From IMG/VR virus record IMGVR_UViG_3300034358_000008, positions 1-64,000 of that record: DNA of 64,000 nucleotides; one strand, 5' to 3'. The notes below the pieces were generated by a model that was given only the letters and a program-made list of their open reading frames with translations, made no database searches and had not been told where the DNA came from. A program made the position numbers and the translations under genes. Shown here piece after piece: positions 39,250 through 42,717 of this stretch (positions within the stretch are counted from its first letter, which is position 1; each line of letters opens with the position of its first letter).

Positions 39250-41160
39250 CTATCGTGACCAGAGTATTTCTTTCCACTCGTCCGGTAGTTTGTTCATCAG
39301 GTCCTCTACAGTTTGACTCTGGATAAACTGTTTCTGGAGTTGATGATACCTCCAACCCTGAACGGTTTCATATCGAATATCATCGGCGTTATTAGAAGCG
39401 ATATAACCCTTGATCACGTGTAAATCATCACGTGTTTCTTTGTCCCATATCGGTACTATAATTACCGTACCCTTGTACTCTTGATAGAAAGCTAGATCTT
39501 TCAGCAAGTAAACTTTCACCTTACAGTCCGTGTGATAATCTACTACCGAATTGTAGTGCTTAATGAGTTCCAATGCCGCGGGGAACAGCATAGCTAATTC
39601 CTTGGACTGCCTTTGTTCAAGTTCCCATTGCATTACAGTTGTAACAGTTTCGTCAGACAACTCAAGTTTGACTGGGTACGATTGACCACATGAGCAATAA
39701 GTGTAAATAAGCTTATTACCTGTTACCCAGATATCGCCCGATTGTTGGGCATGTAACTGGAGACTACCGTCCGCATCTTCAACGAAGTATTCCTTTTCGG
39801 GATTAAATGCAATTACAGGTGACGCTGGATTAGCGTGGATATAACGTGAAAGAATGCTTTGATCTAATACCATGATGTTTGCCTATGTGAAGTTGTCGTA
39901 GTGTGTCTCACCCGACTTCATTAGATTATCAATGTGAGTACTATTTATCCAAAGACCGCTCTAGCAGCCGCTTCGCTTGATTGCAGTTCACCGCAGTAGT
40001 TACTATACCTGCCAGTAGCAGGATCAAAGCGGAGTTGATCTGTTTTCTTAGGACCGATTGTGATTACCAGTTTCTCGCAGGCTTCGCGGAAACTGAGTGC
40101 TGTTTCTCGACCTATTAGACTAGGTGGTTCATGGTTACCATTATCACGCCAACCAACGGACCAGATCTCAAACTCCCGTGGACGAAGGATATGGTCACGG
40201 CACTCTTTAAGGACGGACATGATCTGATCAAAGTCTTCATAGCCTAAAGCTGTAGCATCACGAACAAATGCACGTTGTGAATGGCCATCAGTCACTAGTT
40301 CGTCCAGAGCTTCTGACTTCTCAATCAAGACGCCTTTGTTATAAAGGATAGCGAGGTCGTTCCACTTCATCCATTCACCCTGTGGGTCCTCTGTGAGCTT
40401 CCCAGTGGGTGGTGGAGCATGTCGGTCAACGATGATACCGATTGGTTTAGATGTATAACGTTTAATAAGAGTTAGGGCTGACATTAGTCTACCTGTATGC
40501 TGATGTAGATCTTGGTTGATCCGGCGTAGATGATATCGTCATTGGTGTACTGTCCAGCCGATACTGGTTTAGATCCAATCACTACGTGATAGTTATCATT
40601 CTTGAAGTTCTTTATAAATCGACAAACCTTGTGTCGTATGTATACGCGACATTTAGTCGATAGCCTAGGGAATTCCTTAGCTATGATCCGATCCATTGTA
40701 CGGTGGTAATCTTGCATGGTCACCTCACAACGTGCACCGCTTGGCTAAAATTTCAGGGGTCATCTTTTGAGCTTCATGTTCGCGAGCGGCACGTTCATTG
40801 AATAGTCGACTACGTTCAGCATGTTGGGCTAAACGTTCTTCTCGGGTAGGGGCAATACGTTGAAGGATCTTTTCCAATAGGTTTTCTGAAAGCATGGTAA
40901 CCTCAATGGCACATGTTAGAACCGACTGTATGGCATTCGCACATACAGATCTTTCTTTTGGCTGTACCGACTTCAACATGATGGTAGATAGGGTATCGTT
41001 GTTCCCGACTATAGATCCACTTACCTAGTTCAGAAGTAGTATCTTCTACAGCAACCAACTTAGCGGACTCGCCATAGTTCTGCTGAAGAAATGTTTCCTT
41101 TACCGTACCATCAGTATTGATGTATTTCTGGTAAGTGTTATCACAGCATGGCTGGCACAT
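39250..41160 (-). other. Minus-strand hypothetical CDS (39250-39873, 39945-40484, 40484-40723, 40725-40895, 40903-41160)
   Basis: Coupled ORFs with GAGG SD motifs. Confidence 0.65.
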
Positions 41161-41223
41161 GGATTAATCCTCAATTAGTTAACTATAGGTCTAGACTAGT
41201 GGGTAATCTTTGAGACGGCATAA

Positions 41224-41554
41224 AGCCAGCCCGAAGGCTAGCTCGTACCAATCGACTACTTTTTGTAAGGCGCGGTCTTATTAGCGCTCCCTTGTACATG
41301 AGACCATCATCGCTTCAGTAGATGGAGGGATCTCAAGTAAACAGTTCGGTTGCGCGACGCAACCTATTTCTAACAGCAGCCGGTCCTCCCGGTCATGGGG
41401 TTTGAACCCTTCCGTGTTAGCTGTATTGTACAATGTTCTCTCCGGTGGCTACGGGTCTTTTCCCTCATTCCTGAGGTCTAGGGTCTTCTCACGCTTACGA
41501 GGCGCTGTCACTATCGCAATCCACATGAACATTGTATTCCCGTGCACGGGAATT
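41224..41554 (-). ncRNA. Candidate structured ncRNA (about 310 nt) downstream of tRNA-Trp
   Basis: Several perfect stems, a T-loop-like arm, and a terminator at 41224-41243. Confidence 0.6.
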
Positions 41555-41630
41555 TGGCACGCACCCCAAGAGTCGAACTCGGAACCAACTGCTTTGGAGG
41601 CAGCTGCTCTGCCAGTTGAGCTAGGCACGT
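41555..41630 (-). tRNA. trnW: tRNA-Trp (CCA)
   Basis: 76-nt cloverleaf; anticodon loop CTCCAAA; T-loop TTCGACT; encoded CCA. Confidence 0.93.
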
Positions 41631-41641
41631 ATTAATTCTTT

Positions 41642-41971: not shown

Positions 41972-42142
41972 TTAGATAGTACATCTGCGGTTAAGCATTT
42001 CTTCCGTAGGACGTTGCTGCTTAGCCATCAGTGACAGTTGACGAGTCATCAATACCGTACGCATACGGGAACGCCTTAGCCGTGTGGCTTCATCAGGACC
42101 CATAGCCAACCTAGCTTTTTCATACAGTGCTTCTACTGACAT
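41972..42142 (-). CDS. 56-aa basic protein, paralog of 40725-40895
   Basis: Same length; shared L.EK, P, RL and T.E.L..RCT motif. Confidence 0.65.
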   Translation of the reverse strand: MSVEALYEKARLAMGPDEATRLRRSRMRTVLMTRQLSLMAKQQRPTEEMLNRRCTI

Positions 42143-42199
42143 TTGAATAACCTTTAGGGAAAGACGGAATAAGAGAACCCCGAAGGGCTCTCTTAGAAT

Positions 42200-42359: not shown

Positions 42360-42524
42360 CTATGCTTGCTGTTCACGTTTGTCAAGTATGTACTCGGCAT
42401 CGTTCACAGCTTCTTTTAGAACTTGTTTATCTAGCTTCAGATTTTTCCAGCTAAGTCGAGAGCAACACTGACAGTCAGCTGGTCCGAAGTTATCCAATGG
42501 ACGTGGTTTGATTTTTACTTTCAT
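42360..42524 (-). CDS. 54-aa protein with a CxCC motif, inside the tRNA operon
   Basis: GAGGTG SD before MKVKIK. Confidence 0.6.
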   Translation of the reverse strand: MKVKIKPRPLDNFGPADCQCCSRLSWKNLKLDKQVLKEAVNDAEYILDKREQQA

Positions 42525-42717
42525 CAGACACCTCTTTGAATAGGTAGAATGTAATGTCACTTTAACCAGCGTAAGCTAATAGCCCTGTTAGATAGGCGGG
42601 CCGTCCGAATCAAGGGAGTTGAACCCAAGTTCTACATTACATTCATACAACTGGCGACGGGCACTGTTTAGACTCAGTGCACGGTCAAGCACGCTTGGGA
42701 GGCGACCGTCATTAAAA

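What the first reader, a model, noticed from the sequence alone, without database searches (positions are those of the whole stretch)
41224..41554. About 310-nt multi-domain RNA co-transcribed behind tRNA-Trp
On the minus strand after CCA come a perfect palindrome (ATTCCCGTGCACGGGAAT) and a 10-bp stem TACAATGTTC/GAACATTGTA (41527-36/41429-38) enclosing CCTCA/TGAGG and repeated AAGACCC. Next is a CTAACA/TGTTAG-closed junction (41415-20/41370-75) with a T-loop-like GGG-TTCAAA-CCC arm and a CCGG/CCGG arm. Then GGTTGCG/CGCAACC (41348-64), GAGA..CCATC/GATGG..TCTC, and the terminator. RNase P/E processing of the tRNA would release it as a separate RNA.
Basis: partly seen in the sequence, partly recalled or inferred. 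Interest (0 to 1): 0.7.

Follow-up and report, generated by a model that had tools for sequence, protein, structure and literature searches.

The report
Conserved structured RNAs behind phage tRNA
The 340 bases behind tRNA-Trp in this 325-kb Pseudomonas-type jumbo phage are a string of separate small structured RNA modules, and the first (about 125 nt) is an undescribed, strongly covarying RNA shared by 201phi2-1-like phages, with unknown function.

Summary
The window is a 324,912-bp jumbo phage from a peat metagenome, related to Pseudomonas phage 201phi2-1.

The region is real non-coding RNA, but it is a mosaic and not one integrated 310-nt RNA.

- **Module A (41429-41553, minus strand).** It has a 5' hairpin, a 10-bp closing stem, a second stem and a three-way junction that is almost invariant. 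It occurs once per genome in nine related phages or phage contigs. 98% of pair cells are paired, and 19 of 34 pairs show compensatory changes. It matches no Rfam family. Its neighbours vary: tRNA-Trp, Ser or Cys, or a small ORF upstream, and unrelated genes downstream.
- **Module B (41370-41420).** This is the T-loop-like junction. It is an independent mini tRNA-like element also found in the tRNA clusters of other jumbo phages. Here it lies in an 89-nt insertion that close relatives lack.
- **Module C.** This is a conserved sequence block placed ahead of a canonical phiKZ-type terminator (hairpin plus TTATGCCGT).

The nearest precedent is phage T4, where tRNA-Arg is followed directly by the stable RNAs rnaD and rnaC. 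Function is unknown. I favour release by tRNA-processing enzymes as stable, trans-acting, protein-binding small RNAs.

The parts
41555..41630 (-). tRNA-Trp (anticodon CCA, encoded CCA end). One of only three tRNA genes in the genome.
   Evidence: ARAGORN; Rfam tRNA, 54.7 bits.
41429..41553 (-). Module A: an autonomous conserved structured RNA of about 125 nt. It consists of hairpin P0, closing stem P1, stem P2 and a three-way junction core.
   Evidence: Nine homologues aligned (A4). 98% of pair cells are paired and 19 of 34 pairs are compensatory. Model R1 finds exactly one copy per genome at 143-153 bits. No Rfam match.
41537..41552 (-). P0: a 6-bp hairpin with loop U(G/A)CA, one or two bases after the tRNA's CCA.
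   Evidence: 5 of 6 pairs have compensatory changes. It is missing in one variant from a plant metatranscriptome.
41527..41536 (-). P1, 5' strand (TACAATGTTC).
   Evidence: All 10 pairs show compensatory changes across the homologues.
41429..41438 (-). P1, 3' strand (GAACATTGTA).
41515..41524 (-). P2, 5' strand (GTGG, bulged A, TTGCG). It pairs with 41445-41453.
   Evidence: GTGG/CCAC becomes GCAA/TTGC, GCGA/TCGC, TCGG/CCGA and CCGG/CCGG in relatives.
41439..41444 (-). Near-invariant internal-loop strand C(G/A)GAGA, between P2 and P1.
   Evidence: Invariant columns in A4.
41454..41514 (-). Three-way-junction core. Hairpin Pa is 41491-41505, with the 7-nt loop CUCGUAA. Hairpin Pb is 41463-41476, with a GGA loop in 8 of 9 copies. 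The joining strands are invariant and carry AAGACCC twice (41481-41487 and 41453-41459).
   Evidence: Only 14 of 62 core columns vary, while 43 of 68 stem columns vary. The few changes fit the local hairpins better than the RNAalifold alternative.
41340..41428 (-). A lineage-specific 89-nt insertion that carries module B and the GGTTGCG hairpin.
   Evidence: Contigs of close relatives in three public runs join 41339 to 41429 with 6-7 other bases between (TTAACGT in X6 and X10).
41370..41420 (-). Module B: a 51-nt three-way junction. It has an open 6-bp stem, a T-arm-like hairpin (GGG, loop UUCAAAC, CCC) and the hairpin CCGG-GAGGA-CCGG.
   Evidence: Homologues lie in the tRNA clusters of phage D6 and two IMG/VR jumbo phages. 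100% of pair cells are paired, with 4 compensatory pairs.
41348..41364 (-). A 7-bp hairpin, GGTTGCG / CGCAACC, inside the insertion.
   Evidence: Sequence and scan. No homologue was found, so there is no comparative support.
41295..41339 (-). Module C: a conserved block (core TCCATC..CTGAAGC at 41312-41326).
   Evidence: The core is present in 7 of 9 A-bearing loci, downstream of A on the way to the next terminator, which lies about 45 nt beyond it in five of them. A shared structure was not established.
41244..41294 (-). A window-specific filler between module C and the terminator.
   Evidence: It aligns to nothing in the relatives.
41215..41243 (-). phiKZ-type intrinsic terminator: an 8-bp hairpin with a TTCG loop, then TTATGCCGT.
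   Evidence: The same hairpin-plus-TTATKYYGT motif recurs in the window and 38 times in the genome. It matches the phiKZ terminator consensus in PMC10914365.

Best explanation
The stretch is the non-coding 3' part of the transcription unit that carries tRNA-Trp. It ends at a standard phiKZ-type terminator. It is a mosaic of independent RNA modules, not one RNA machine.

**Module A** (41429-41553) is an autonomous small RNA gene of a new family, confined to 201phi2-1-like jumbo phages. A 5' hairpin and a 10-bp closing stem hold an almost invariant three-way junction.

**Module B** (41370-41420) is a miniature tRNA-like element, an open stem plus a T-arm-like hairpin plus a closed hairpin. It also sits in the tRNA clusters of other jumbo phages and was inserted here.

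**Module C** is a conserved block ahead of the terminator.

**How it most likely works (inferred).** The precursor is cut by the host tRNA-maturation enzymes. An endonuclease of RNase E type would cut in the A/U-rich 1-9-nt linker after CCA, and RNase P would cut wherever a tRNA follows. This frees the modules as discrete RNAs. Their closed ends protect them from exonucleases, as happens with phage T4 rnaD and rnaC behind tRNA-Arg.

Module A then acts in trans. Its invariant junction strands, with AAGACCC twice, a 7-nt loop and a GGA loop, would form a specific surface for a protein. The partner is unknown.

**Shown:** the structures, their conservation, their modularity, their strand, the terminator, and the absence of a coding frame.

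**Inferred:** co-transcription, processing, stability, and action in trans.
For: **Phage identity**
- blastn hits to 201phi2-1 and Viktualia. The record is 324,912 bp.

**Module A**
- Nine homologues.
- Covariation is 98% paired, 19 of 34 pairs compensatory, slid controls 32-46%.
- G-U pairs occur on this strand only.
- Stems vary in 43 of 68 columns, while the core varies in only 14 of 62. Selection therefore acts on the junction sequence itself.
- One copy per genome. Present in six complete genomes, one genome fragment and two metagenome contigs. Absent from D6, two other IMG/VR jumbo phages, phiKZ, PhiPA3, Psa21 and Phabio.
- A pattern scan of one genome from each of 185,579 bacterial and archaeal species found none.

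**Autonomy of A**
- The upstream neighbour is tRNA-Trp (three times), tRNA-Ser, tRNA-Cys, or a small ORF (four times). Downstream genes are unrelated.
- In L022, A lies between tRNA-Cys and tRNA-Trp.

**Modularity**
- The 89-nt piece 41340-41428 is absent in relatives.
- B sits in other phages' tRNA clusters, directly 5' of a tRNA in D6 and G005, and covaries.

**Terminator**
-.

**Precedent**
- In T4, tRNA-Arg, rnaD (1-nt gap) and rnaC lie in one precursor that terminates after species I RNA.

**Hint of accumulation**
- In a plant metatranscriptome, the only contig matching 5.4 kb of 201phi2-1 is a 185-nt contig. 124 nt of it are identical to 201phi2-1 module A without P0, plus the first bases of C.
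Against: - There is no RNA-seq for this phage. The single low-depth contig (depth 2.8) could come from DNA carry-over.
I cannot say whether module A is among them.
- The fold of the junction core is unresolved, because it hardly varies.
- No partner protein or target was identified. No antisense target of 11 nt or more exists in the phage genome.
- In one genome (G001) A is followed within 30 nt by a ribosome-binding site and ATG with no terminator, which would also fit a leader.
- phiKZ-type phages are reported, from my own memory, to inhibit the host degradosome. That would complicate processing by RNase E.
Confidence: 0.5

Rival explanations
1. One reading: the whole 41224-41554 stretch is one integrated multi-domain RNA of about 310-340 nt, and its domains work together.
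For: All domains lie between the tRNA and the first terminator on one strand. A and C are adjacent in 201phi2-1, G003 and G006, and would give an RNA of about 215 nt there.
Against: - Close relatives lack 41340-41428.
- The A-to-C distance varies from about 18 to 436 nt and can include a tRNA gene.
- G001 and G002 have A without C.
- B occurs without A.
- Each domain is closed by its own stem.
Confidence: 0.12
2. A cis-acting element. Module A, with C and the terminator, would be a leader, attenuator or riboswitch-like aptamer that controls read-through into the next gene. Alternatively it would be a 3' structure that only protects or helps to process the upstream tRNA or mRNA.
For: - In 8 of 9 loci a terminator follows (within about 270 nt in seven of them, about 650 nt in L022), then an ORF.
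- The 201phi2-1 study found 8 sRNAs made by premature termination in 5' UTRs.
- G001 has A directly before a ribosome-binding site and ATG.
Against: - Downstream genes are unrelated from genome to genome, and upstream partners also differ. A gene-specific regulator is therefore unlikely.
- The terminator is the generic genome-wide type.
- A mere exonuclease block would not need 48 invariant core positions.
Confidence: 0.15
3. Module A is a self-cleaving ribozyme that trims the 3' trailer of the tRNA. This would be functionally like the theta (HDV-like) ribozymes of gut phages.
For: - In 4 of 9 loci it starts 1-9 nt after the tRNA 3' end.
- It has a highly conserved junction.
- Theta ribozymes set a precedent for ribozymes at phage tRNA 3' ends.
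Against: - The covariation-supported fold is a hairpin plus a three-way junction, not a nested double pseudoknot.
- No ribozyme family of Rfam matches, even at E up to 10.
- Four copies follow a small ORF and one lies about 100 nt from its tRNA.
- A variant lacks the 5' hairpin.
Confidence: 0.05
4. Module A is a sponge for a host RNA-binding regulator of the CsrA/Rsm type. Binding would go through GGA motifs presented in a hairpin loop and an internal loop.
For: - Pb presents GGA in its loop in 8 of 9 copies, as (U)CA(N)GGAUGA. From memory, this resembles the Rsm/CsrA site.
- A second GGA lies in the CGGAGA internal loop in 8 of 9 copies.
Against: - Each GGA is lost in one homologue, L008 and L017 respectively.
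- Known sponges carry many such sites.
- The idea does not explain the most conserved parts: the AAGACCC repeats, CGAUAGUG and the Pa loop.
Confidence: 0.06
5. The conserved feature is a protein-coding frame (the + strand 77-aa ORF 41402-41635 or a minus-strand small ORF), or a DNA-level site.
For: An antisense frame is open across the module in several homologues. Viktualia has an annotated 38-aa CDS over it.
Against: - The + strand ORF runs through the antisense of tRNA-Trp.
- The homologues have different flanks.
- Length differences of 1-3 nt inside the Pb loop break any common frame.
- Substitutions are compensatory in stems.
- G-U pairs on one strand only argue against a DNA hairpin.
Confidence: 0.02

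Closest known systems
Phage T4 small stable RNAs rnaD (species 2) and rnaC (species 1) in the tRNA gene cluster
   Same: - The layout is the same. In T4, rnaD starts one base after tRNA-Arg, rnaC follows six bases later, and the transcription unit ends after it.
- One precursor yields eight tRNAs and both RNAs (PMC2330249).
- They are of similar size (119 and 139 nt) and their function is unknown.
- T4 rnaC carries a T-arm next to an acceptor-like end. Modules B and E here are likewise tRNA-like.
   Different: - There is no sequence or structure homology. Model R1 gives only noise on the T4 locus.
- The phage lineage and transcription machinery differ.
- Module A also occurs away from tRNAs, behind small ORFs.
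Small RNAs mapped by ONT-cappable-seq in 201phi2-1 and phiKZ (PMC11512511, PMC10914365)
   Same: It is the same phage group. Eleven sRNAs were reported in 201phi2-1, three of them intergenic, and one sRNA is conserved across genera. Module A lies in an unannotated intergenic gap of 201phi2-1, between gp451 and gp450.
   Different: The sRNA described in that text (sRNA005, upstream of the tail gene gp277) is a different locus. Module A is absent from phiKZ and PhiPA3.
Bacterial Y RNA-like YrlA tRNA-like domain (PMC4201824), for modules B and E
   Same: Both have a T-arm-like hairpin followed by a closed acceptor-like stem-loop, on an open basal stem. Module E also has a D-arm, in the YrlA order T, acceptor stem, D.
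   Different: - The phage has no Ro60/TROVE gene.
- There is no GNCGAA motif.
- There is no Rfam match.
- Module B has no D-arm and only a 3-bp T stem.
Theta (minimal HDV-like) ribozymes at phage tRNA 3' ends (PMC10879173)
   Same: Both are structured RNAs abutting the 3' end of a phage tRNA gene, and both could make the phage less dependent on host 3' processing.
   Different: The fold is different (no nested double pseudoknot). There is no Rfam hit. The element is not always tRNA-linked. The hosts and phage groups differ.
phiKZ-type intrinsic terminator
   Same: A GC-rich hairpin followed by TTATKYYGT. Here it is TTATGCCGT.
   Different: None found. This part is ordinary.

Membership tests
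Any curated Rfam 15 family | A covariance-model score at or above the family's gathering threshold. | tested here: not met
   Only the three tRNAs pass. At E up to 10 on 2.4 kb and on 366 nt, nothing credible overlaps 41215-41554.
T4-type stable RNAs of phage tRNA clusters | The gene lies directly behind a tRNA gene, on the same strand, before the terminator of the same unit. | tested here: met
   Window: 1-2 nt after the CCA, with the first terminator at 41215-41243. T4 layout.
T4-type stable RNAs of phage tRNA clusters | It accumulates as a discrete, processed, stable RNA. | not testable with these tools
   There is only one low-depth metatranscriptome contig from a relative.
T4-type stable RNAs of phage tRNA clusters | Homology to T4 rnaC or rnaD. 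| tested here: not met
   Model R1 with filters off on the T4 locus gives a best hit of 9.9 bits outside rnaC/rnaD, on the tRNA strand.
Theta / HDV-like ribozyme | A nested double-pseudoknot fold. | tested here: not met
   The covariation supports a local 5' hairpin plus an enclosing stem and a three-way junction. No HDV-type Rfam hit.
Theta / HDV-like ribozyme | The cleavage site lies within about 5 nt of a tRNA 3' end. | tested here: inconclusive
   The gap is 1-9 nt in 4 of 9 loci. It is about 100 nt in one locus, and four loci have no adjacent tRNA.
Theta / HDV-like ribozyme | Self-cleavage that depends on a catalytic cytosine. | not testable with these tools
   This needs an in-vitro transcription assay.
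YrlA / bacterial Y RNA (modules B and E) | A T-arm-like hairpin with a UUCRANY-type 7-nt loop, next to a closed acceptor-like stem-loop. | tested here: met
   B has loop UUCAAAC and the hairpin CCGG-GAGGA-CCGG. E has loop UUCAACU and the GGCCC/GGGCU stem-loop.
YrlA / bacterial Y RNA (modules B and E) | A Ro60 (TROVE) gene nearby, and a GNCGAA Ro-binding motif near the 5' end. | tested here: not met
   PF05731 was not found in the genome, while the control genomes were positive. The motif is absent from the four E copies and from B.
tRNA-like RNA signature of the 2026 preprint (tLRNA) | An acceptor-like helix of 5-8 bp joined without spacer to a 5-bp T stem with a 7-nt loop. | tested here: not met
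   In B the T stem has 3 bp and is separated by 4-5 nt from both neighbouring helices.
phiKZ-type intrinsic terminator | A GC-rich hairpin followed by TTATKYYGT. | tested here: met
   41224-41243 plus TTATGCCGT. Consensus quoted.
Riboswitch or gene-specific leader | A constant association with one downstream gene family. | tested here: not met
   The downstream ORFs differ among the nine loci. Pfam finds nothing in the window's neighbours.
CsrA/Rsm sponge RNA | Several GGA motifs presented in hairpin loops, conserved across homologues. | tested here: not met
   There is one loop GGA (8 of 9 copies) and one internal-loop GGA (8 of 9 copies). Neither is invariant.

The most novel reading that the evidence does not exclude
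Module A is a new functional RNA fold of nucleus-forming jumbo phages. It would be a ribozyme, an aptamer, or a decoy that captures a host RNA-targeting defence or a translation or RNA-processing factor. The mini tRNA-like modules around it (B and E) would be decoys for tRNA-recognising enzymes. The phage tRNA locus would then be an 'RNA island' of counter-defence or host-takeover RNAs.
Probability: 0.2. Interest if true: 0.8.

Novelty: new variant of a known kind. Interest (0 to 1): 0.55.

Why it matters
Non-coding RNAs of nucleus-forming jumbo phages are almost unexplored. Module A shows nucleotide-level conservation of a junction while its stems have turned over completely. That is the signature of a specific molecular function, and no curated family matches it.

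It is present in 201phi2-1, a laboratory phage with a published long-read transcriptome, so the prediction of a discrete stable RNA can be checked quickly.

The T4 tRNA-cluster RNAs rnaC and rnaD have, as far as I know, had no known function for about fifty years. A second, unrelated phage group with the same arrangement, including tRNA-like mimics, suggests a general use of tRNA operons as launch pads for small RNAs. It also offers a new system in which to find out what they do.

Tried and rejected
- **Rfam.** Searched at gathering and at permissive thresholds on three nested ranges. Only tRNAs were found. The weak snoRNA and plastid hits are noise.
- **Pattern scans in metagenome and genome collections**. 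2 of 12 metagenome hits were true homologues (L017, L022). All 11 genome hits were chance matches in coding DNA.
- **A third pattern scan** gave one chance hit, L048, in GC-rich coding DNA.
- **The search for related loci with the neighbouring 281-aa protein** found only one relative, already known.
- **RNA evidence.** No run of this phage is RNA. Two 'RNA' wastewater runs look like DNA.
- **23S rRNA mimicry.** AAGACCC resembles the peptidyl-transferase-loop segment GAAAGACCC. The literature string search hit only mitochondrial LSU primers. A shared 8-mer between a 125-nt RNA and a 2.9-kb rRNA is expected by chance about five times (my estimate). I dropped this lead.
- **Antisense targets of the conserved loops in the phage genome.** Only the locus itself matches at 11 nt or more.
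- **A promoter-like AT-rich box after the terminator** is not repeated in the window.
- **Sigma-70 scan** is uninformative for this phage.
- **Consensus structure of module C.** RNAalifold found none on the MAFFT alignment.
- **Pseudoknots in the core.** There is too little variation to test them.
- **Supplementary tables of PMC11512511** are not held.
- **phi29 pRNA-like loop-loop pairing, a kink-turn, and a tRNA anticodon-arm mimic (Pa loop CUCGUAA).** I considered these by eye only. None is supported.

Full report
**What the window is.** The window is the first 64 kb of a 324,912-bp virus record rated complete. A peat-metagenome run holds it in full. The only DNA-level matches among 50,697 phage records are to the jumbo Pseudomonas phages 201phi2-1, Viktualia and D6. 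The genome has just three tRNA genes (Tyr, Asn and Trp), all on the minus strand at 41.5-42.8 kb.

**Checking the observation.** The details are in the observation check.
- The first 130 nt fold better than shuffles (z = -3.6). The whole 355 nt give z = -2.3.
- Rfam 15 recognises nothing here except the tRNAs, even at E up to 10 on a 366-nt slice.

**Module A.** blastn showed that only 41429-41554 is conserved in 201phi2-1 and Viktualia, at 87% identity. Short conserved strings then retrieved further copies.
- Five IMG/VR loci carry it: four new ones plus 201phi2-1's own record.
- Two large metagenome contigs (211 kb and 290 kb) carry it.
- No copy turned up in one genome from each of 185,579 bacterial and archaeal species.

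The nine distinct sequences align over 127-130 nt (A4). I tested the following structure:
- hairpin P0;
- 10-bp stem P1;
- stem P2, of 4 plus 5 bp;
- two local hairpins, Pa and Pb, in a three-way junction.

The result was clear.
- 98% of pair cells are paired, against 32-46% when the 3' partners are slid.
- 19 of 34 pairs have compensatory changes.
- 0 of 500 shuffles reach the observed value on four of the five measures.
- All ten P1 pairs, five of six P0 pairs and the four outer P2 pairs have changed on both sides.
- G-U pairs appear on this strand only, so the structure belongs to an RNA with the polarity of the tRNA.

The junction behaves in the opposite way. Only 14 of its 62 columns vary, while 43 of 68 stem columns vary. 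It carries AAGACCC twice, a 7-nt loop CUCGUAA, and a GGA loop in 8 of 9 copies.

The few core changes fit the local hairpins better than the long-range alternative from RNAalifold. Examples are the G-to-A change that turns a G-U pair into A-U in Pa, and the loop changes in L007 and 201phi2-1.

A covariance model (R1) finds exactly one copy, at 143-153 bits, in each of these:
- the window's genome;
- three other complete IMG/VR genomes;
- 201phi2-1 and Viktualia;
- one genome fragment;
- the two metagenome contigs.

It finds none in D6, two further IMG/VR jumbo phages, phiKZ, PhiPA3, Psa21 or Phabio.

**Context of module A.** The upstream neighbour differs from locus to locus.

| Upstream neighbour | Loci |
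|---|---|
| tRNA-Trp, 1-9 nt away | window, G001 |
| tRNA-Trp, with a 100-nt element between | G003 |
| tRNA-Ser | Viktualia |
| tRNA-Cys | L022 |
| Small ORF whose stop codon abuts the hairpin | 201phi2-1, G002, G006, L017 |

In L022, module A lies between two tRNA genes. The downstream ORFs are unrelated from genome to genome, and the window's neighbours have no Pfam family. Module A is therefore an autonomous unit. It is neither a trailer of one tRNA nor the leader of one gene.

**No coding frame.** No coding frame can be the conserved feature.
- The copies differ by 1-3 nt inside the Pb loop.
- The 77-aa + strand ORF runs antisense through the tRNA.

**Module B and the insertion.** The CTAACA/TGTTAG junction has homologues in the tRNA clusters of phage D6 and of two IMG/VR jumbo phages that lack module A.
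- Its closing stem changes from CTAACA/TGTTAG to CTAGCA/TGCTAG and to ATCAGCA/TGCTGAT.
- One pair of the small hairpin also covaries.
- All pair cells are paired.
- In D6 and G005 it ends directly in front of a tRNA gene.
- Its first hairpin has a 7-nt loop, UUCAAAC, that fits the T-loop pattern. The stem has only 3 bp and there is no D-arm.

In this phage, B lies in an insertion. Contigs of close relatives in three public runs join 41339 to 41429 with 6-7 other bases between, so they lack B and the GGTTGCG hairpin.

**Module C and the terminator.** A block with the core TCCATC..CTGAAGC is present in 7 of 9 A-bearing loci, downstream of A on the way to the next terminator.
- The terminator lies about 45 nt beyond the core in five of those loci.
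- The block lies 18 to 436 nt after A.
- Each copy folds as a hairpin, but no common structure came out of the alignment.

The final hairpin plus TTATGCCGT is ordinary.
- The same hairpin-plus-TTAT motif recurs across the window and 38 times in the genome.
- It matches the phiKZ intrinsic-terminator consensus ending TTATKYYGT (PMC10914365).
- 201phi2-1 terminators share that motif (PMC11512511).
- No such motif lies between the terminator behind tRNA-Asn (about 42164) and 41215. The tRNA and the modules are therefore most simply one transcription unit. This is an inference.

**Expression evidence is thin.** No RNA run of this phage exists.
- One plant metatranscriptome holds a single 185-nt contig, at depth 2.8.
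- 124 nt of it are identical to 201phi2-1 module A without P0, plus the first bases of C.
- Upstream of that it diverges, and nothing else from 5.4 kb of 201phi2-1 is present.
- This fits a stable abundant RNA and shows that P0 is dispensable, but DNA carry-over cannot be excluded.
- The 201phi2-1 long-read transcriptome paper reports 11 sRNAs, three of them intergenic.

**Comparison with what is known.** The best precedent is phage T4.
- In the annotated T4 record, rnaD (119 nt) starts one base after tRNA-Arg, and rnaC (139 nt) follows six bases later.
- Both come from the same precursor as the eight tRNAs, which terminates after species I RNA (PMC2330249).
- There is no homology: R1 gives only noise on T4.
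- T4 rnaC ends in a T-arm next to an acceptor-like stem. This parallels the tRNA-like modules here.

Theta (HDV-like) ribozymes also sit at phage tRNA 3' ends. The fold supported here is not a double pseudoknot, and A is not always tRNA-linked.

The tRNA-like modules have the topology of YrlA (T-arm, closed acceptor stem, D-arm on an open stem). The phage has no Ro60/TROVE gene, no GNCGAA motif and no Rfam hit.

**Mechanism and verdict.** I favour, at about 0.5, this reading. The precursor is punctuated by the tRNA and cut by host tRNA-maturation nucleases. The modules are released as closed-end, exonuclease-resistant small RNAs. Module A acts in trans, through its invariant junction, on an unknown protein partner.

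| Rival reading | Probability |
|---|---|
| One integrated 310-nt RNA | 0.12 |
| A cis leader, attenuator or stabiliser | 0.15 |
| A self-cleaving ribozyme | 0.05 |
| An Rsm/CsrA sponge | 0.06 |
| A coding or DNA-level feature | 0.02 |

The finding is real. It is a new RNA family in a known kind of setting.

Noticed in passing
window 42545-42646 (minus strand), just 3' of tRNA-Tyr; also L007:731-828, L011:1431-1529 (minus), L047:5350-5447: Module E is a structured RNA of about 100 nt with a circularly permuted tRNA-like core. The order is variable loop, T-arm with loop UUCAACU, acceptor-like stem closed by a loop that begins GCC, then a canonical-looking D-arm. All of this sits on an 11-bp basal stem in which all 11 pairs have compensatory changes across four phages. 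The topology is that of YrlA Y RNAs. The genome has no Ro60/TROVE gene and Rfam gives no match. In G003 this element sits between tRNA-Trp and module A.
   Followed up: partly
window 42360-42560 (minus strand): The listed 66-aa ORF starts with GTG inside the 3' strand of module E's basal stem. The real start, if the ORF is real, is probably the internal ATG (MKVKIKP...).
   Followed up: no
window 40725-40979 and 41972-42140 (minus strand); 201phi2-1 gp449-gp451; G003, G006: The tRNA/RNA region is interleaved with arrays of tiny paralogous ORFs. Their C-terminal halves share a helix-like motif ending ...(V/M)TPE(M/I/L)L(A/N)(K/R)RCT(L/I). They have no Pfam family.
   Followed up: no
window 40903-41160 (minus strand): An 85-aa cysteine-rich protein (it starts MCQPCC and ends C.C.CH......C.) lies just after the terminator. 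Homologues occupy a similar position in G006 and further downstream in 201phi2-1. It has no family match.
   Followed up: no
L002 about 2700-2765 (Viktualia) and L022, between module A and tRNA-Trp: A further shared non-coding block (module D, with the core GAGGATAGCGGTTAGCTCAC) lies between modules A and C. In L022 it is directly upstream of tRNA-Trp. It is not present in the window's genome.
   Followed up: no
L002:2532-2648 (Viktualia, PV037725): The annotated 38-aa 'hypothetical protein' CDS lies wholly inside module A and is probably a mis-call.
   Followed up: partly
L049:2409-2547 (phage T4 rnaC): T4 species 1 RNA folds far better than shuffles (z = -4.6). It ends in a canonical T-arm (CCGGG, loop UUCGAAU, CCCGG) next to an acceptor-like stem. 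It is therefore itself tRNA-like.
   Followed up: no
window 42164-42195 (minus strand): tRNA-Asn has its own phiKZ-type terminator (hairpin plus TTATTCCGT) a few bases after its 3' end. The three tRNAs are therefore probably not one operon.
   Followed up: no
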